NCBI GenBank assembly: GCA_013416795.1
Contig: RQSC01000004.1
Span: forward strand, 500,854 to 564,853
DNA length: 64,000 nt
DNA from: Prasinococcaceae sp. CCMP 1430
Lineage: Eukaryota > Plantae > Prasinodermophyta
Direction of reading: 5' to 3'
Each line of letters begins with the position of its first letter. The first letter of the stretch is position 1. This document shows, in pieces, positions 47,613 through 54,307 of this stretch. The position numbers and the translations under genes were made by a program. Below the pieces are notes generated by a model. It was not told the DNA's origin. It saw nothing but the letters and a program-made list of their open reading frames with translations, and did not search any database.

Positions 47613-50444
47613 TTACACTTGATACCGCCCCCCCACGGCATGGCCCGGCAGGCTCTGCTTGGCCACCTCCTCCTCGATGCGGCGCTTGATGTCGCTGCGG
47701 CAACGCCTGACTGACATTTCGCTCTTGCCCTCGATGAGGATGTACAGTTTGCGCTCGCCAGGTGGCACCTTCAGGCCTGGCTTGACGTAGACACCCTTGG
47801 GCGTGAGCGACACCTCGTGGTTGCGCTCCATCTCCATGAAGGCTTGCTTGTTGGTCACCGCGTACCGCGCGGGCTGGCTGAAGTCGTTGATCTCAATCTC
47901 CGACTGGAAGTGCCCGCGCAGCGAGGGGGGCGCCGCGTGATTCTGCGGCCCGACGGCACCGCCGAGGCGCAGGCTGAGTGACTTGGCCGTTTCGCTCGCC
48001 TTGAGCACGATGGCGTTCTGCGTCCCGGCCACCACCAGTTGTTGCTTGGCCATGGCCTCGGCCGCAGCCTTGGCGGCCGCCTGCGCCGCGGCGCGCTGCG
48101 CGGCGGTCACGCCCGGCGCGTCGCCAGTCCCACTTCCGCCCGCCGTCGAGCTCGAGGGAGCAGCAACGGCGTCGCGCACGCCCAGGCCCGCCGCGATGGG
48201 CTTCAGCACCCCCTTCTCCTTGGCAGCCTTGGAGTTGGCCTCCGCCTTGGCGATGAGCATCTGGGCGTGCTGCTTGGCGCGGTCACGCGCGGCCTCCTCT
48301 GCCGTCTTGACCACGCCATCATCCTCCGAGTCCGACGAATCGCTGTCGGCGCCGTCGCCCGCACCGTCGCCAAACTGCTTGGCCTGCGCCTTGCGCTTCT
48401 TGCTGCCCTTGTCGGCCTCCTCCTTGTCGAAGCGGAAGCCCTTGCCACCGAAGCCAGAGCCCGCGGTGCTGGCCGTGCCCAGAAGCAGCCTCTGCTTCTG
48501 CTGGTAGTTGAGCGCGCGAAGGCCGAGCGGTATGTGCTGGCCACTCTGCTCGAGCGCCTTGATTATGTCGTTCGCGTAGTGCGACTCATCGGTGCCAATG
48601 AACGTGTACGCAGTGCCCTTGTTGCCCGCGCGGCCCGTCCGCCCGACGCGGTGCACGTAGTCCTCCATGTGCGACGGCGTGTCGTAATTGATGACCAGAC
48701 GGCATCCGGGCACGTCCAGGCCGCGGGCGCACACAGACGTGGCCACGATCATGTTGCACACGTCGCTCTTGAAGTCCGCGATGGTCGTGTCGCGGTCGGC
48801 CTGCTCCTGGCCGCCGTGCAGGCTGAGGCACGGGTAGCCCGCGCGCAGGAGGTCCTGGAAGAGCTTGGCACACCTGTCCTGGGAGTGCACAAAGATGATC
48901 ACCTTGCCCAGCTCGAACCACTCGCCGAGGAGCTCGAGTGTGCGCAGGAACCTGTCCTCCTCTGGCCGCACCTCTACGTGCTGGTCGATGTCGCGATTGA
49001 CCACGGACCTGCCGCCCACCAGAATCTCCAGCGGACTGCTGAGCGCCTCCTTGGCGAGCAGCTCGACCTGCCTGGGGAAAGTGGCGGAGAACATGACGGT
49101 CTGGCGGTCGGGGCGCGTGTTTTGTATGATCTTGGTGATCTGCGGCGCGAAACCCATGTCGAAGCACCTGTCTGCCTCGTCGAGAACCAGGAAGCTCACA
49201 CGGCCCAGGTTGGTGACCTTGCCGCCGCCGGCGGTGAGGATGTCGATGAAGCGCCCTGGCGTGGCCACGACGATCTCGCAGCCCGCCTTCATGGCAGAGA
49301 TCTGCGCACCGATTGGGCTGCCGCCGTACGCGGCCACCACGCGCAGGTTCACCGCGCGCGCGAAGCGCCGCGTGTCCTCGTAAATCTGCCGCGTGAGCTC
49401 GCGCGTGGGCGCCATCACCAGCCCCACCATGCCCTCGCCCTGCGCCAGCGGGCGCTGGTCCATCACGTGGCGCAGCATTGGGAGCACGAATGCCAGCGTC
49501 TTGCCCGAGCCCGTCTTCGCGATGCCTATGCAGTCGCGCCCGCTCATGATGGCGGGCAGTGCTTGCGCCTGGATGGCCGTCGGCTTCTCGAACGCCAGCT
49601 TTTTGAGGACACCGAGGATGCGGTCGCTGAGGCCGCACTGGTACCAGCTGCGGATGGGGCACGGCGCGCCCTTGCCGCGCACGCGGATCTCGAGCTCCTC
49701 CTTGAGCGCGGCGCGCGCCTCGGCGCCCATGCGCTTGAGCTCTGGCGCCTCGATGTACAGATCCTTCCGAATGGGCTCGTACGCGACCGCGGCGTGGTCG
49801 ACGCGCGCCATCCTGTCCGACTTGGAGCGCTGGGTGGTCAGCCGCTTCGCCCACTCGGCGTCGGTCTCCTCCTTGGCGGCGCGTCGCGCCGCCTCCTCGT
49901 CCTCGCTGTCTGAGTCCGCCCCGTCCCCGAATCGGCTCAGCGGAAGCTCACGCCCACCTGCGCCGCTCGCACCGCCGCCGCCCTTCCCCCCGCCCGTGCC
50001 GCTCGCACCGTTCGGGGGCGCACCCTCCTTCTCTCTGTCCTCCAGGCGCTGCACCTCGGGCATCACCTCAGCGGCCATGAAAGCGTCGAGCGGATCGACC
50101 TCGTCGTCGGCTGCGGGCTGCTGCTGCGCGGCTTCCGCGCCAGCGCCGGGCGCCGGGGCAGGCGCGCTGCCGCCGTCGTCGTCTGCGAACCCCGGCGGGA
50201 GGCGCTGCTTGGGCGCCTCCTCAGCGAACAACGACGCGGGCCTGCGCGCCCCTGCGCCGCTGCCGCCGCCGCTGCCACCGCCAGCAGCGCCCGCACCGCC
50301 GCCGCTCCCCCCCGCGGCGGCGCCGGCACCGCCGAACGCGAACGCCGGCGCGCCGAACTTAATCGGCGCCGGCTTGGCCTGCGATGGGGACGCCNGCTCG
50401 CGCCGCGCCCCACGGCGCCCCTCCTCGTCCCTCTCGGCCCCCAC
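47613..50444 (-). CDS. DDX46: DEAD-box RNA helicase DDX46/Prp5 (spliceosome assembly); N-terminus disrupted at an ambiguous base near 50395
   Basis: DEVDPLDAFM, RVDHAAVAYEPIRKDLYIE, AKTGSGKTLAF, APTRELTRQI, VLDEADRCFDMGFAPQI, YVHRVGRTGRAG, GFGGKGFRFD, KH-like C-terminus EIEINDFSQPARY..YILIEG. Confidence 0.95.
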   Translation of the reverse strand: MGAERDEEGRRGARREXASPSQAKPAPIKFGAPAFAFGGAGAAAGGSGGGAGAAGGGSGGGSGAGARRPASLFAEEAPKQRLPPGFADDDGGSAPAPAPGAGAEAAQQQPAADDEVDPLDAFMAAEVMPEVQRLEDREKEGAPPNGASGTGGGKGGGGASGAGGRELPLSRFGDGADSDSEDEEAARRAAKEETDAEWAKRLTTQRSKSDRMARVDHAAVAYEPIRKDLYIEAPELKRMGAEARAALKEELEIRVRGKGAPCPIRSWYQCGLSDRILGVLKKLAFEKPTAIQAQALPAIMSGRDCIGIAKTGSGKTLAFVLPMLRHVMDQRPLAQGEGMVGLVMAPTRELTRQIYEDTRRFARAVNLRVVAAYGGSPIGAQISAMKAGCEIVVATPGRFIDILTAGGGKVTNLGRVSFLVLDEADRCFDMGFAPQITKIIQNTRPDRQTVMFSATFPRQVELLAKEALSSPLEILVGGRSVVNRDIDQHVEVRPEEDRFLRTLELLGEWFELGKVIIFVHSQDRCAKLFQDLLRAGYPCLSLHGGQEQADRDTTIADFKSDVCNMIVATSVCARGLDVPGCRLVINYDTPSHMEDYVHRVGRTGRAGNKGTAYTFIGTDESHYANDIIKALEQSGQHIPLGLRALNYQQKQRLLLGTASTAGSGFGGKGFRFDKEEADKGSKKRKAQAKQFGDGAGDGADSDSSDSEDDGVVKTAEEAARDRAKQHAQMLIAKAEANSKAAKEKGVLKPIAAGLGVRDAVAAPSSSTAGGSGTGDAPGVTAAQRAAAQAAAKAAAEAMAKQQLVVAGTQNAIVLKASETAKSLSLRLGGAVGPQNHAAPPSLRGHFQSEIEINDFSQPARYAVTNKQAFMEMERNHEVSLTPKGVYVKPGLKVPPGERKLYILIEGKSEMSVRRCRSDIKRRIEEEVAKQSLPGHAVGGRYQV

Positions 50445-50862
50445 ACCCCGCCGCCCGCTCCGCGCGTCCCGGCGCGGGCTCTGGCGCGGGCGCCGCTAGC
50501 TAGGGCGCGCGCCTCCCGCCCGTGCCGCGGCACCGGCACATCAAAAACTGCCGCCGGCCCCTTTCCCCCCGCGACCGCCGTCGTCATCCCCAGTCTCATC
50601 CTCGGGCTGTCCCGGGTACCAGCGATGGTACCATGATGGTACTGGGACTGGTTGACAGGATTCAAACCCAAACGTGCCCTCCGCCAAAACTGGATGAAAA
50701 GTGCACTCTTCACCCAAAACTAGACCCTACAAACACTTTGATGACCGTAAATGCGCCATAACGCGGGGCTCCGGGAGGCGCCCCGGGGTCGCGGGCGGGG
50801 CCATGCAAGACAATCTGTTTTTTTTTTTTTTTACTGTGTGTGCGTGCAGGACGCCGAGCAGT

Positions 50863-52022
50863 TTACTGCGAGAGCGGGCGCGTTCGCGAGGGCGGTGGCA
50901 TGGCGCCGTCAGCCGGTGTCGAGCGCGACAGGCCCCATCGGTGGGCGCGCGGCGGCTCCGCGCCGGCGCAGTCTCGGGCGGGGCGCGGCACGCGCTCGCG
51001 TGCACGCTCGTGCACTCTCGCGCTCCAACGGCGCCGCGCGCCGCCCGATCACGTACCATTCCGTAGTCGTCGCCGAAGCAGTAGTCGTCCTCCGACTCGG
51101 ACTCCGGGAAGCACTTCTTGCTGCGCAGGTAGGTGAACGCGCCCGCAAGGCCGGTGTCCTTGAGCTTGATGGGGAAGGTGATGCCCGGCTTGCCCTTCAC
51201 GACGAAGGCGCCCTTGGTCTCGCAAATGCCCGGCAGCACCTCGGTGGCGTCCGGCTCGTTGATGAACGCCACCACGCTCTCAACCCACTCCTTGCAGTTG
51301 ATCTTCTCCACGAGCTCCTTGGGCACGTGCGCAACCACCGCCAGCTGATCGTTCGACGCGCTGAAGATCATCTTGCCGATGTGGCCCGAGCCGCCCTTGC
51401 GCTCCTCCGCGTCGGGCTCGACCTCGACGTTCATGGCGTCCATCGCCATCTGCAGCAGCTCGATGTCGCCCTCGGACTTCTCGAGGGTCGTGCAGAAGAA
51501 CTGGAATGGAGTGTGGCGGACGGGCGGATGGATGGGAGGGTCGGACGCGCGCGCCCGCGGCGATGTCAGCGGCGAGCGAGGGGCGCGCCAAGTGCGGTCC
51601 GCGGGCGGCGCGAGCGCGCTTGGGCGCCGGGCGCGCGCGCGCGCTCGGTACGCACCTCCATGCCCAGCGTCATCTCGGCCGCGCCCGCGATGTCGACGGC
51701 CTTCTTGCCGCCCTCCTTCTTCGCGTCCTTGACCTGCTTGGCGCGCTTCTCCTCAGCCGTGGGCTCCTTCTTCTCCTTCTTGGGGGGGGGCGCCTTCTTC
51801 TCCTTCTTCTCCTTCTTGGGCTGCTCCTTCTTGGGCTGCTCCTTCTTGCCGGCCGCGGCGGGCGCCGATGCGCCGGTCACGCCAGCGGGCGTGCCCGGGA
51901 AGGCCTTGGCAAGCAGCGCGGCGACGTGCGAGTACCAGCGCGCGGCGTTGGGCGTCGCCGACGCGTCGGGCGCGGCGCCGACGGCCACGAAGACGTCGAG
52001 GTCGTCCTGCGAGGCCTGGAAG
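50863..52022 (-). CDS. Uncharacterised fusion protein: eEF1B-type N-terminal GST-like segment + Lys-rich linker + C-Ala/DHHA1-like domain; exons 52022-51656, 51500-51057, 50865-50863; first exon not located
   Basis: FQASQDDLDVFVAVGAAPDASATPNAARWYSHVAALLAKAFPG; KKEQPKKEKKEKK; KEGGKKAVDIAGAAEMTLGME|FFCTTLEK..EERKGGSGHIGKMIFSA..LAVVAHVPKELVEKINCKEWVESVV; acidic end ESEDDYCFGDDYGM; strong codon bias. Confidence 0.8.
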
Positions 52023-52644
52023 CTGCGAGGACGTCGCGCCGCGGGGTGTTCGCGGCTCGCCTCGTCAGCGCTTGTGCGCGTGCTTGGCCGAGCGGGCGGG
52101 CCCGCAGGGCGGGAGAGGGTGGGCCGGGGGGGGTCCATGGCGGAGGTCAAGGCCGCCGGCAAGTACCGGCTGGAGTTACGCCCGCGCGCGCCGCGCGGGC
52201 GGCGTCCCCCGCCCTGCAGCGCCGCGGCGCCCTCGAGAGCGCCACCGCACACGCCGATGGCCGCGTCGATCGATGCCCTCGGGAGGTCTCTCTCTCTCTC
52301 GCCGCCTGCTCGCCGTCGGCCGGCGCCGGGCGCAAAGCGCCGCAGCCGCGGAGACGGCGGCTCGGCGGCGGCTGCTGCGACCCGCACAGGCCGCGGCGCC
52401 AAAAGGTGGGGGCATCAGTCGGTCAGATCAGATGATGGATGGCACTGGTACGCACGCACACGGCCGGGGGAGGTTGGGGTGGGGAAGGTCGGGGGGTGGG
52501 TGGGCACCCGACCGACGATCGGCGAGGGCCCTTCGGTCGGAAACCCTCTCTTCTCTCCGGGGCGGGTCGGCGCGTGGGGATGCCAGCGAAGAAACCTCTC
52601 CGCCGTGCGCGTTTCGATCGATCGATCGACTGTGAGGCGCGGAC

Positions 52645-52900
52645 GGCAGGGGGGGCACTTTTTTATTTATTGACGTACTTTCTCGCGAAAATCATCGGGC
52701 GGAGGGCCATCAATGCGCTTTGAAGTGGGATCGCTTTTTTCCTTTTCCCGGGGGGTAGCCGTGGGACGTCACCAAAATCCCTACCAAAAAGCTCTCGCGG
52801 CGCGAAAAGCGCAGGTGCGGGGCCCCCGCAGGGGATCCCAACCAAGCAGATGAAAGAGCGGACGAAATGCGGGTGTGCGGGGGTGGGTTTAGGGGACGAT
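52645..52900. promoter_or_regulatory. Divergent promoter between the eEF1B-N fusion gene and RPL36, with T/A tracts and a telomere-like heptamer
   Basis: ttttttatttattg, cgcgaaaa at ~52684 and ~52801, gggtttaggg at 52885. Confidence 0.5.
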
Positions 52901-54094
52901 ACTGCGAAACGGGTTCGCATTCGGTGGCCATCAATCAAAGGCCATCGATCGATGGATGCTCGTTCATCCGCTGCTCGCGCGGCATCCCCATCCATCCCCA
53001 TGTGGATTGGGGTTCCGCACCGCGTGGCGGCGCCCCGGCGCGCGCGCGCTTCGCGGCGGGCGGCCCCGGGATCGATGGGGGCGCGGGCGCACGGCGCTCC
53101 CGCCCTCGCGCGCTCGCCTGCCCGCTCCCCCCCCCCGCTCCTCCGCGCGCGCTCTCCNNNNNNNNNNNNNNNNNNNNNNNNNNNNNNNNNNNNNNNNNNN
53201 NNNNNNNNNNNNNNNNNNNNNNNNNNNNNNNNNNNNNNNNNNNNNNNNNNNNNNNNNNNNNNNNNNNNNNNNNNNNNNNNNNNNNNNNNNNNNNNNNNNN
53301 NNNNNNNNNNNNNNNNNNNNNNNNNNNNNNNNNNNNNNNNNNNNNNNNNNNNNNNNNNNNNNNNNNNNNNNNNNNNNNNNNNNNNNNNNNNNNNNNNNNN
53401 NNNNNNNNNNNNNNNNNNNNNNNNNNNNNNNNNNNNNNNNNNNNNNNNNNNNNNNNNNNNNNNNNNNNNNNNNNNNNNNNNNNNNNNNNNNNNNNNNNNN
53501 NNNNNNNNNNNNNNNNNNNNNNNNNNNNNNNNNNNNNNNNNNNNNNNNNNNNNNNNNNNNNNNNNNNNNNNNNNNNNNNNNNNNNNNNNNNNNNNNNNNN
53601 NNNNNNNNNNNNNNNNNNNNNNNNNNNNNNNNNNNNNNNNNNNNNNNNNNNNNNNNNNNNNNNNNNNNNNNNNNNNNNNNNNNNNNNNNNNNNNNNNNNN
53701 NNNNNNNNNNNNNNNNNNNNNNNNNNNTCGCTGGGGCGCAGGCCGCGCCTCTGGGGGTTGGGCGCGGCGGGGCAGCCGGACGCGCGCAAGGCGCGCAAGG
53801 CGCGCCGCGCCGTGCGCGCAGCTGCCACGATCGTGCTGGCGACTGCGGTGCTGCGCCGCCATGGCGCGGTTTCCCTCCTCGCAGAGGCTTCCGCCTTGCG
53901 CTCGGGCAGTGTGCCCTGGGGCAGACATGCTGCCGACCATCATCGCGAGTTGGGGAGGGAGGGAGGGGGAGGCGCACGCGCCGCGCCGCCACCCGGCGGG
54001 CTTAGGAGCGCAGCGTGCTGCGCCGCGCGGACTGATGAGCTGACGTCGACGCCCTCGCCCCCGGCGCACGCTCGCTCCCCTCTGCGCCCCACAG

Positions 54095-54307
54095 GTGAAG
54101 GGCAAGCGCGTGGCGTTCGTGCGCTCGCTCGTGCGCGAGGTGTGCGGCCTCGCCCCGTACGAGAAGCGCCTGTGTGAGATGCTCAAGGTCGGCCGCGACA
54201 AGCGCGCGCTGAAGCTCGCCAAGGCCAAGCTCGGCACGCACACACGCGCCAAGCGGAAGCGCGAGGAGATGCAGGCGTACATGCGCTCGCAGAAGCAGAA
54301 GAAGTAA
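54095..54307 (+). CDS. RPL36: 60S ribosomal protein eL36 (L36e), last exon; upstream exon(s) not visible, probably in the N-gap
   Basis: [56 protein letters not shown]; acceptor cccacag| at 54094 with a CTGAC branch point at ~54040. Confidence 0.96.

What the first reader, a model, noticed from the sequence alone, without database searches (positions are those of the whole stretch)
50863..52022. Abundant-looking protein fusing an eEF1B-type GST-like domain, a Lys-rich linker and a C-Ala/DHHA1-like domain: candidate Arc1p/AIMP-like translation scaffold
Seen: one continuous spliced ORF with codon bias as strong as KARI and RPL36. The N-part (ASQDD..PNAARWYSHVAALLAKAFPG) matches the N-terminal domain of plant eEF1B subunits, but the eEF1B GEF domain is absent. 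Instead a KKEQPKKEKKEKK linker leads to a domain whose core LAVVAHVPKELVEKINCKEWVESVV resembles the eukaryotic AlaRS C-Ala segment (CLCQVPQ..KASEWVQQV). Established: yeast Arc1p and metazoan AIMP1 use a GST-like docking domain, a Lys-rich linker and a tRNA-binding module to tether synthetases. Inference: this may be an analogous, undescribed tRNA-channelling cofactor that docks on eEF1Bgamma or synthetases. It shares a telomere-repeat-containing divergent promoter with RPL36.
Basis: partly seen in the sequence, partly recalled or inferred. Interest (0 to 1): 0.72.

Follow-up and report, generated by a model that had tools for sequence, protein, structure and literature searches.

The report
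eEF1B-beta head, C-Ala-like tail protein
This green-alga gene encodes an abundant translation-machinery protein that keeps the docking head of elongation factor 1B but carries a diverged copy of the alanyl-tRNA synthetase tail domain in place of the exchange domain; it belongs to a large undescribed family whose named members all come from lineages that use the alternative elongation factor EFL.

Summary
Transcript contigs from two studies join the N-part and the C-part into one spliced mRNA (introns 51655-51501 and 51056-50866, stop 50865-50863). About 100 further bases, ending ...YLADKSYITG, come from an exon 1 that is absent from the window's letters and probably lies in the N gap 53158-53727.

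- **N-part:** an eEF1B-alpha-type N-domain. The family profile hits human eEF1B-beta chain 5DQS_D at E 3.7e-18. No GEF domain is present.
- **C-part:** a diverged paralogue of the AlaRS C-Ala domain. The ortholog model matches human C-Ala at Z 15.3, rmsd 2.3 Å over 132 residues. hhalign against a canonical C-Ala gives E 3e-6. Pfam has no model for it.
- **What differs from C-Ala:** the GGKGGGK tRNA-contact motif is reduced to GG, an invariant EERKGGSGHIGK loop is inserted, the domain is acidic, and it ends in an acidic FGDD tail.
- **Family:** at least 949 clusters. The module is almost always C-terminal, behind a Lys-rich linker. Partners include eEF1B-alpha heads, eEF1B-gamma-like GSTs, WHEP and several aaRSs, and also unrelated enzymes.
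- **Taxa:** nearly all named carriers belong to EFL-using lineages, which are reported to lack the eEF1B-alpha GEF.

The function (Arc1p-like tRNA adaptor, EFL partner or assembly tag) is inferred, not shown. I found no paper describing the family.

The parts
51887..52022 (-). Second half of the eEF1B-alpha-type N-domain (QASQDDLDVF...PNAARWYSHVAALLAKAFPG). The first half lies in the missing exon 1.
   Evidence: Translation. PDB hit 5DQS_D at E 0.09 for this piece alone and E 3.7e-18 for the family profile A4. Transcript contigs continue upstream with ...YLADKSYITG.
51740..51886 (-). Lys-rich, low-complexity linker (net charge +8, pI 9.9). Its length appears to differ between the window and the transcript contigs.
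   Evidence: The contigs show 15- and 30-nt gaps at 51764-51837. A comparable Lys-rich linker precedes the module in the fusion proteins I read.
51656..51739 (-). Start of the C-Ala-like module. It is the helical part carrying the near-invariant KEGGK+G..I.GAA.M motif (here KKEGGKKAVDIAGAAEM).
   Evidence: Alignment A2. Helix 70-96 in the ortholog model. It aligns to the helical subdomain of a canonical C-Ala.
51501..51655 (-). Intron, 155 nt, GTGCGT...CAG. It splits the module.
   Evidence: Skipped by transcript contigs X1 record 1 and X2 record 4 (table 5). Splice sites.
51108..51500 (-). Globular (DHHA1/C-Ala-like) subdomain of the module.
   Evidence: The window's own model (pLDDT 74) has human C-Ala 5T5S as top Foldseek hit (E 4e-3, prob 1.00, rmsd 2.9 over 119 columns). 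Ortholog model: Z 15.3.
51372..51407 (-). Family-specific invariant loop EERKGGSGHIGK, an insertion relative to the canonical C-Ala it was aligned with. Candidate functional site.
   Evidence: Invariant columns in A2/A3. It falls in an 11-residue gap of the hhalign alignment to a canonical C-Ala.
51057..51107 (-). Acidic C-terminal tail with the conserved [FY]GDD motif (here ...SESEDDYCFGDDYGM, net -7).
   Evidence: The module ends within 10 residues of the protein's C-terminus in 270 of 293 family members.
50866..51056 (-). Last intron, 191 nt, GTACGT...CAG. It lies between the last sense codon and the stop codon.
   Evidence: X2 record 4 joins 50865 to 51057 (table 8). In X1 the loose end after 51057 reads TAAACTG.... 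Splice sites.
50848..50865 (-). Stop codon TAA (50865-50863) and the start of the 3' UTR.
52023..53157 (-). Sequenced part of intron 1 (acceptor AG at 52024-52023). Exon 1 is not in it.
   Evidence: Transcript contigs break at 52023. The next 30 transcript bases have no match in the window.
53158..53727 (.). Assembly gap (570 N). Probable location of exon 1, of the promoter, and of the 5' exons of RPL36.
   Evidence: This is an inference.

Best explanation
The gene encodes a roughly 300-residue, highly expressed, non-catalytic adaptor of the translation machinery. It is a counterpart of eEF1B-alpha in which the nucleotide-exchange domain has been replaced.

Shown:
- One spliced mRNA encodes an eEF1B-alpha-type N-domain, a Lys-rich linker, a diverged paralogue of the AlaRS C-Ala domain (helical plus DHHA1-like globular part), and an acidic C-terminal FGDD tail.
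- The same linker-module-tail cassette sits at the C-terminus of eEF1B-gamma-like GST proteins, WHEP proteins and several aminoacyl-tRNA synthetases in other protists.

Inferred mechanism:
- The N-domain docks on the GST-like domain of eEF1B-gamma-type proteins, as human eEF1B-beta does in PDB 5DQS.
- The basic linker together with the C-Ala-derived module holds tRNA, Arc1p-like.
- Synthetases and eEF1B-type scaffolds carrying the cassette are thereby tied to one pool of tRNA and the elongation factor.
For: - One mRNA with both introns confirmed.
- N-domain profile against human eEF1B-beta N-domain, chain D of the eEF1B-gamma complex 5DQS: E 3.7e-18. Weaker hits to the MSC scaffolds AIMP3 and p43.
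- C-module of ortholog P0013 (50% identical over exon 3; model pLDDT 82): Foldseek 5T5S E 2e-7; VIA Z 15.3, rmsd 2.3 Å over 132 residues to human C-Ala 5T76 and 6NLY. RecJ-type DHHA1 domains score Z 12.5 or less.
- The window's own exon-3 model gives the same top hit. The independent ESM Atlas model of the Pycnococcus ortholog also matches AlaRS C-termini.
- hhalign against the canonical C-Ala of an AlaRS fragment: probability 88%, E 3e-6.
- C-Ala is described as the major tRNA-elbow-binding module of AlaRS (PMC10036535, PMC10485164).
- Partners of the module: eEF1B-alpha heads in 69 of 484 fetched members; GST/Arc1p_N-like in 34 of 138 long N-extensions; WHEP; class II aaRS cores; an AlaRS fragment that keeps its own DHHA1 domain; a class I anticodon-binding domain.
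- Codon bias equals that of RPL36.
Against: - No binding was measured.
- The GGKGGGK motif, whose lysine contacts tRNA G18 in C. elegans C-Ala (PMC10485164), is reduced to GG.
- The globular core is acidic (median net -5, pI about 4.95) and the tail strongly so. That is not the usual look of a tRNA-binding surface.
- The cassette is also fused to a kinase, a molybdopterin enzyme, PNP, HMA, ankyrin, Alba, RING and other domains. This argues for a more general role.
- Docking on eEF1B-gamma is by analogy only.
Confidence: 0.4

Rival explanations
1. EFL partner. The C-Ala-derived module with its acidic FGDD tail binds the elongation GTPase EFL, as a recruitment or hand-off site or even as a non-homologous exchange factor. 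It would replace the eEF1A-specific GEF domain of eEF1B-alpha and the C-domain of eEF1B-gamma in lineages that switched from eEF1A to EFL. Synthetases carrying it would hand aminoacyl-tRNA directly to EFL.
For: - Nearly every named carrier belongs to a lineage reported to use EFL: dinoflagellates (Alexandrium, Zooxanthella), haptophytes (Prymnesium, Chrysotila, Haptolina, Calcidiscus), chlorophytes and prasinodermophytes (Pycnococcus, Prasinococcus, this window), the chlorarachniophyte Amorphochlora, the cryptophyte Rhodomonas, the red alga Timspurckia, and the fungi Spizellomyces, Thoreauomyces, Catenaria, Blastocladiella and Zoopagomycota.
- No land plant or animal appears in any list, and the only Dikarya are three Aspergillus species.
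- The literature reports that EFL lineages lack eEF1B-alpha and leaves a non-homologous GEF open (PMC3938643). EFL is the dominant factor in Spizellomyces (PMC3699394).
- In a haptophyte protein that UniRef names 'EF-1-gamma', the module replaces the EF1G domain.
- The module is acidic, as a partner of a basic GTPase would be.
Against: - This is correlation only. Only the best 120-150 hits of each search are listed, and few carry names.
- EFL lineages dominate marine transcriptomes, so the protist part of the pattern is weakly informative.
- The EFL status of Prasinoderma itself was not checked.
- Three Aspergillus species carry degenerate copies.
- The module has no similarity to any known GEF fold.
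- It is also fused to unrelated enzymes.
Confidence: 0.3
2. Generic assembly tag. The module is a self-associating or hetero-associating C-terminal domain; C-Ala is the dimerisation domain of archaeal AlaRS. It clusters whatever it is fused to and has no tRNA or EFL specificity. The translation partners would reflect only that such proteins are abundant and already modular.
For: - A. fulgidus C-Ala (2ZVF, the 'C-terminal dimerization domain') is among the structural matches.
- The partners are very promiscuous, including metabolic enzymes with many cluster members.
- Tandem arrays of two or three modules occur in dinoflagellate-type sequences.
- The module is strictly C-terminal.
Against: - The invariant EERKGGSGHIGK loop and the FGDD tail look like ligand-contact motifs rather than a dimer interface.
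- Only one long helix of the helix-loop-helix zipper is left.
- The largest identifiable partner classes are eEF1B-type and GST docking domains.
Confidence: 0.2
3. Artefact. The N- and C-parts belong to different genes, or the ORF is a chance product of 70% GC DNA.
For: High-GC DNA gives many long spurious ORFs on both strands here.
Against: - Transcript contigs from an isolate run and from marine metatranscriptomes carry both parts with both introns removed.
- Hundreds of homologues have the same architecture.
Confidence: 0.01

Closest known systems
C-Ala domain of alanyl-tRNA synthetase (human cytoplasmic 5T76/5T5S, human mitochondrial 6NLY/6NOW, Aquifex 3G98, Archaeoglobus 2ZVF; Pfam DHHA1 PF02272)
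   Same: - Same two-part fold, an N-terminal helix plus a DHHA1-like alpha/beta globule (Z 15.3, rmsd 2.3 Å over 132 residues).
- Profile-level sequence similarity to a protist AlaRS C-Ala (E 3e-6).
- The conserved strand-strand-helix core (..FSAG..LAVVAYVP....EW...V..GG) matches the canonical ..LLLS..GKLAVLASVP....AW..VV..IGG.
   Different: - Not attached to an AlaRS editing domain.
- Not recognised by PF02272.
- GGKGGGK is reduced to GG.
- It has an 11-residue invariant loop (EERKGGSGHIGK) that is an insertion, an acidic surface, and an acidic FGDD C-terminal tail.
- The helical subdomain is shortened to one helix.
- One AlaRS fragment (P0129) carries its own DHHA1 domain and this module behind it, so the two are paralogues, not the same domain.
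eEF1B-alpha / eEF1B-beta (EEF1B2; PDB 5DQS chain D with eEF1B-gamma)
   Same: N-terminal domain, with motifs L..KSYI.G...SQ.D..VF and ..RWY.H. This domain binds the GST-like domain of eEF1B-gamma in human.
   Different: No EF1_GNE exchange domain (PF00736) and no central acidic EF-1_beta_acid motif. A Lys-rich linker and a C-Ala-like module take their place.
Yeast Arc1p and metazoan AIMP1/p43
   Same: The same design logic: a helical GST-C-like docking head, a Lys-rich linker, and a C-terminal module taken from a tRNA-binding family. It is non-catalytic and abundant.
   Different: The head is of eEF1B-alpha type. The C-module has the DHHA1/C-Ala fold, not the OB-fold TRBD/EMAPII. tRNA binding is untested.
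AlaXp type II (free-standing editing protein with a C-Ala domain)
   Same: It shows that C-Ala-type domains can leave AlaRS (PMC10485164).
   Different: AlaXp-II keeps the editing domain. Here the module stands alone or on unrelated partners.

Membership tests
eEF1B-alpha/beta (EF-1-beta) | N-terminal eEF1B-gamma-binding domain | tested here: met
   Family profile A4 against PDB gives 5DQS_D at E 3.7e-18. The window's own partial piece gives E 0.09. The transcript supplies the missing ...YLADKSYITG.
eEF1B-alpha/beta (EF-1-beta) | C-terminal guanine-nucleotide exchange domain (Pfam EF1_GNE PF00736) | tested here: not met
   No Pfam hit at E up to 10 for either exon, and none in the full-length ortholog P0358. 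The C-part folds as C-Ala/DHHA1.
C-Ala / DHHA1 | Helical plus DHHA1-like globular fold | tested here: met
   Foldseek E 2e-7, VIA Z 15.3, rmsd 2.3 Å over 132 residues to human C-Ala. The window's exon-3 model gives the same top hit. Atlas models agree.
C-Ala / DHHA1 | Sequence match to the family model (PF02272) | tested here: not met
   No PF02272 hit in the window's exons or in orthologs. In P0129, PF02272 marks residues 288-385 only, not the module at 427-604. The PDB profile search finds no AlaRS. Only hhalign against one canonical C-Ala region reaches E 3e-6, probability 88%.
C-Ala / DHHA1 | GG-rich motif GGKGGGK with tRNA-contacting lysines | tested here: not met
   In the hhalign alignment the canonical GGKGG lines up with GGxV of the module. 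The motif's role is taken from PMC10485164.
C-Ala / DHHA1 | Tethered behind the AlaRS (or AlaXp-II) editing domain | tested here: not met
   The window's protein has an eEF1B head instead. In 484 fetched members, AlaRS is a rare partner.
C-Ala / DHHA1 | Binds the tRNA elbow | not testable with these tools
   Needs EMSA or a structure.
Arc1p / AIMP1-type aaRS cofactors | GST-like docking head | tested here: inconclusive
   The head is eEF1B-alpha-like. The same profile also hits AIMP3 (E 1e-6), p43 (E 4e-5) and Arc1p (E 0.05) more weakly.
Arc1p / AIMP1-type aaRS cofactors | OB-fold tRNA-binding domain (TRBD/EMAPII) | tested here: not met
   No Pfam hit. The fold is DHHA1-like.
Arc1p / AIMP1-type aaRS cofactors | Lys-rich linker between head and C-module | tested here: met
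   49 residues, net +8, pI 9.9.

The most novel reading that the evidence does not exclude
The linker-module-tail cassette is the missing EFL-side partner. In lineages that replaced eEF1A by EFL, both eEF1B-alpha and eEF1B-gamma kept their docking heads but swapped their C-terminal domains for a C-Ala-derived module that binds EFL, for exchange, recruitment or direct hand-off of aminoacyl-tRNA. Several synthetases acquired the same module. This would be a remodelled eEF1B complex specific to EFL eukaryotes.
Probability: 0.3. Interest if true: 0.9.

Novelty: new variant of a known kind. Interest (0 to 1): 0.75.

Why it matters
- **A standing open question becomes testable.** It has been reported since 2014 that eukaryotes using EFL instead of eEF1A lack the exchange factor eEF1B-alpha, and the question of whether EFL recharges alone or uses another factor was left open (PMC3938643). 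This family shows that the eEF1B-alpha head, and in haptophytes the eEF1B-gamma head, survive in such lineages on a different C-terminal domain. That gives a concrete protein to test against EFL and tRNA.
- **A new role for C-Ala.** The family makes the C-Ala fold a mobile appended domain of the eukaryotic translation apparatus, comparable to WHEP, GST-like and EMAPII modules. It is very abundant in marine algae yet has no Pfam model.

Tried and rejected
- **Pfam on both exons at E up to 10:** nothing relevant.
- **phmmer of the C-exon, and hmmsearch of the module profile, against PDB sequences:** only chance hits (KDPG aldolase, Atg16). Sequence alone does not reach AlaRS structures.
- **Exon 1:** I looked for it by eye in 52024-52700, including the in-frame ATG at 52138. 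I rejected that reading because transcripts splice at 52023 to sequence not in the window.
- **The plus-strand ATG at 52138 as a start of RPL36 or another gene:** it turned out to be a 43-nt fragment matching another mRNA.
- **Ferredoxin-like, eEF1B-GEF-like fold for the C-part:** I considered it from the pattern 'strand, acidic loop, helix'. The models rejected it.
- **Giant viruses as carriers:** none found in IMG/VR.
- **Earlier scan notes on EFL or eEF1A in this genome:** none.
- **Literature:** searches on EFL/eEF1B, on C-Ala and on aaRS appended domains in algae, plus one on Prasinoderma and EFL, found no description of this family. This is not proof that none exists.
- **Supplement table of PMC3938643, with per-species EFL status:** not held.
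Full report
**1. What is in the window**

Read from the sequence, the structure is:
- An exon at 52022-51656. Its first base completes a codon, and 122 in-frame codons follow.
- A 155-nt intron at 51655-51501 (GTGCGT...CAG).
- An exon at 51500-51057 (148 codons).
- A 191-nt intron at 51056-50866 (GTACGT...CAG).
- The stop codon TAA at 50865-50863, so the last intron separates the last sense codon from the stop.

**2. Transcript evidence**

A 927-nt contig of an isolate run (X1, organism A) and a 947-nt contig of a marine metatranscriptome (X2) each cover both exons and skip the 155-nt intron. X2 also joins 51057 to 50865.

Both contigs continue 102-104 nt upstream of 52023. The first 30 of those bases read ...YLADKSYITG, then G|FQASQDD across the junction. 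That is the expected first half of an eEF1B-type N-domain. The 30-mer has no match in the window at up to 3 mismatches.

Exon 1 is therefore absent from the sequenced letters. The 570-N gap at 53158-53727 is its likely place. By comparison with orthologs, about 28 codons are missing, which gives a protein of about 300 residues.

The contigs show 15- and 30-nt gaps inside the Lys-rich repeat. This is either a length polymorphism or an alignment effect in a repeat.

**3. Expression proxies**

GC3 is 0.96 and Nc about 27 for the two exons. The RPL36 last exon (54095-54307, plus strand) has GC3 0.97, and the adjacent DEAD-box ORF has GC3 0.89 and Nc 34. The codon-bias claim holds. For the pooled figure I concatenated the two exons inside a script, for codon counting only.

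The 'telomere-repeat promoter shared with RPL36' reduces to one TTTAGGG at 52888-52894. The window holds 3 such heptamers against 0.7 expected. It lies in what is now intron 1, and the real promoter is hidden by the gap.

**4. The N-part**

Alone, the 45 residues in the window hit the human eEF1B-beta N-domain (5DQS chain D) only at E 0.09. A profile of 17 family N-termini that includes the window's piece (A4) hits the same chain at E 3.7e-18. The next best hits are AIMP3/eEF1E1 and delta-class GSTs at about 1e-6, p43 at 4e-5 and Arc1p at 0.05.

5DQS is the complex of this domain with the GST-like domain of eEF1B-gamma. That is the basis for the inferred docking. No exchange domain follows.

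**5. The C-part**

Pfam and PDB sequence searches are blank. Instead I folded a natural full-length ortholog with the same architecture (P0013, 252 aa, 50% identical to the window's exon 3) using 54 aligned sequences. The model has pLDDT 82.4.

Matches of that model:
- Foldseek puts human cytoplasmic C-Ala first (5T5S E 2e-7, 5T76 E 6e-7). Human mitochondrial C-Ala, Aquifex C-Ala and the Archaeoglobus AlaRS dimerisation domain follow.
- VIA-align gives Z 15.3, rmsd 2.3 Å over 132 residues to 5T76, and Z 15.3 to 6NLY. RecJ/Cdc45/GdpP-type DHHA1 domains score Z 8-12.5.
- The aligned range, 69-230, covers the long helix and the globule.

The window's own exon 3, folded alone (pLDDT 74), gives the same top hit (5T5S, E 4e-3, prob 1.00, rmsd 2.9 over 119 columns). 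Searches of the ESM Atlas, both with my model and with the Atlas's own model of the Pycnococcus ortholog, put AlaRS C-termini (PF02272) right after the family's own clusters.

At sequence level, hhalign of the module profile against the canonical C-Ala region of an AlaRS fragment (P0129:200-426) gives probability 88%, E 3e-6. That alignment shows three things:
- The helix and the strand-strand-helix core are shared.
- The canonical GGKGG lines up with a bare GG.
- The family's most conserved element, EERKGGSGHIGK, is an 11-residue insertion.

P0129 itself has tRNA_SAD, then its own DHHA1 domain (288-385), then this module (427-604), which PF02272 does not recognise. So the module is a paralogue of C-Ala, not C-Ala itself.

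**6. The family**

A word-indexed search with the C-domain found 306 proteins. The exhaustive profile search found 949 clusters at 50% identity with E up to 1e-3, of which 626 have E up to 1e-10.

Properties of the module:
- It is about 174 residues long and very uniform in length.
- It ends within 10 residues of the C-terminus in 270 of 293 complete cases.
- It is preceded by a Lys-rich linker in the architectures I read.
- It is acidic, with a median pI of 4.6. The globular core has median net -5 and the last 22 residues net -10.

Architectures seen:
- Stand-alone module.
- Tandem arrays of two or three modules.
- Behind eEF1B-alpha-type heads (69 of 484 fetched members, including Pycnococcus, Prasinococcus and Prymnesium).
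- Behind eEF1B-gamma-like GST domains (Arc1p_N_like or GST families in about 34 of 138 long N-extensions). These include a Chrysotila protein that UniRef names 'Elongation factor 1-gamma', which has no EF1G domain.
- Behind WHEP repeats.
- Behind class II aaRS cores of the D/K/N and G/H/P/S/T types, behind an AlaRS fragment, and behind a class I anticodon-binding domain, which I read as ValRS-like.
- Also behind a protein kinase, a molybdopterin enzyme, PNP_UDP, AP_endonuc_2, HMA, ankyrin, Alba, RING, C2 and cyclophilin domains.

The GST and eEF1B-head fusions are backed by many cluster members and by genomic contigs. Some single-member aaRS fusions from metatranscriptomes could be assembly chimeras at the low-complexity linker.

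**7. Taxa**

Few hits carry names. Those that do are:
- Dinoflagellates: Alexandrium, Zooxanthella.
- Haptophytes: Prymnesium, Chrysotila, Haptolina, Calcidiscus.
- Green algae: Pycnococcus, Prasinococcus and this window.
- Amorphochlora (chlorarachniophyte), Rhodomonas (cryptophyte) and Timspurckia (red alga).
- Fungi: Spizellomyces, Thoreauomyces, Catenaria, Blastocladiella.
- Degenerate copies in three Aspergillus species of section Flavi.
- Atlas clusters labelled Chlorophyta, Haptophyta and Zoopagomycota.

Apart from Aspergillus, all are lineages reported to use EFL:
- Dinophyceae and Rhodophyta 'all EFL encoding', and Bigelowiella: PMC3938643.
- Chlorophyta: PMC2652445.
- Spizellomyces with EFL dominant: PMC3699394.
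- Haptophytes, cryptophytes, Blastocladiomycota and Zoopagomycota: from my own knowledge of the EFL literature.

No land plant or animal appears in any list, and the only Dikarya are those three Aspergillus species, although these groups dominate the named databases. PMC3938643 reports that EFL lineages lack eEF1B-alpha and explicitly leaves open a non-homologous GEF.

Caveats: only the top 120-150 hits of each search are visible; EFL lineages dominate marine data; and I could not check EFL in Prasinoderma itself.

**8. Function**

Shown: the gene structure, the domain identities, the family size and the architectures.

Inferred: docking on eEF1B-gamma-type GST domains, by homology with 5DQS, and a client contact made by linker, module and tail.

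I rank three clients:
- **tRNA, Arc1p-like (0.4).** For it: C-Ala ancestry, the basic linker and the aaRS partners. Against it: the lost GG-motif lysines and the acidity.
- **EFL (0.3).** For it: the phyletic pattern, the replacement of exactly the eEF1A-directed domains, and the acidity. The FGDD tail reminds me of the acidic FG motifs of eEF1B-alpha and of the P-stalk tail; that is recalled from memory and was not tested.
- **A general assembly tag (0.2).** For it: the promiscuous partners, the tandem arrays, and the fact that archaeal C-Ala dimerises.

These readings are not mutually exclusive.

**9. Novelty**

The module has no Pfam model. I found no paper describing it. Databases call members 'uncharacterized', 'EF-1-beta', 'EF-1-gamma', 'alanyl-tRNA synthetase' or 'flagellar associated protein'.

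It is a new variant of known kinds: a C-Ala paralogue used as a mobile appended domain, and an eEF1B-alpha without its GEF domain. Interest is high because it touches the open EFL/eEF1B question.

Noticed in passing
window 52133-52175 (+): A 43-nt stretch inside intron 1 matches, with one mismatch, part of other well-covered transcripts in three runs. It reads ..AEVKAAGKYRLE there and continues GKSYVVKDGD, which is OLA1/YchF-like by my reading. It has no splice signals at its edges. It looks like a small captured fragment of another gene's mRNA. It also explains the misleading in-frame ATG at 52138.
   Followed up: partly
window 53158-53727 and 54095-54307 (+): A 570-N gap hides exon 1 of this gene and, presumably, the 5' exons of RPL36. 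The last exon of RPL36 (VKGKRVAF...QKQKK*) lies at 54095-54307. The divergent-promoter arrangement cannot be checked in this assembly.
   Followed up: partly
window 51764-51837 (-): Transcript contigs from the isolate run and from seawater differ from the window by 15- and 30-nt gaps in the KKEQP/KKEKK-coding repeat. This may be a length polymorphism of the Lys-rich linker between strains, or an alignment effect in a repeat.
   Followed up: no
P0129 (AlaRS fragment, 604 aa): An AlaRS C-terminal fragment that carries its own DHHA1/C-Ala domain (288-385) and, behind a Lys-rich linker, a second module of the new type (427-604). That is two C-Ala-type domains in tandem.
   Followed up: partly
P0004-P0008, P0032, P0121: Dinoflagellate-type sequences hold two or three complete modules head to tail, each with its own linker and FGDDDFPS end. 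They resemble the polyprotein-style transcripts of abundant dinoflagellate proteins.
   Followed up: no
P0218, P0398, P0399 (Aspergillus caelatus, A. pseudocaelatus, A. bombycis): Stand-alone, partly degenerate copies of the module (GGSRH in place of GGSGH in P0218, which also has no FGDD tail) in three Aspergillus species of section Flavi. These are the only Dikarya seen. They could be horizontal acquisition, a relic or contamination.
   Followed up: no
P0034, P0114 (N-terminal about 110 aa): Another recurring partner of the module is a domain with no Pfam match (..REWRCKW.., ..VQRVVCGGCLDFKVVTKL..).
   Followed up: no
window 47613-50444 (-): A long ORF just downstream, on the same strand, with DEAD-box helicase motifs (..VLDEADRCFDMGF..) and a Gly/Ala-rich N-terminus. 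It holds one N at 50395.
   Followed up: no
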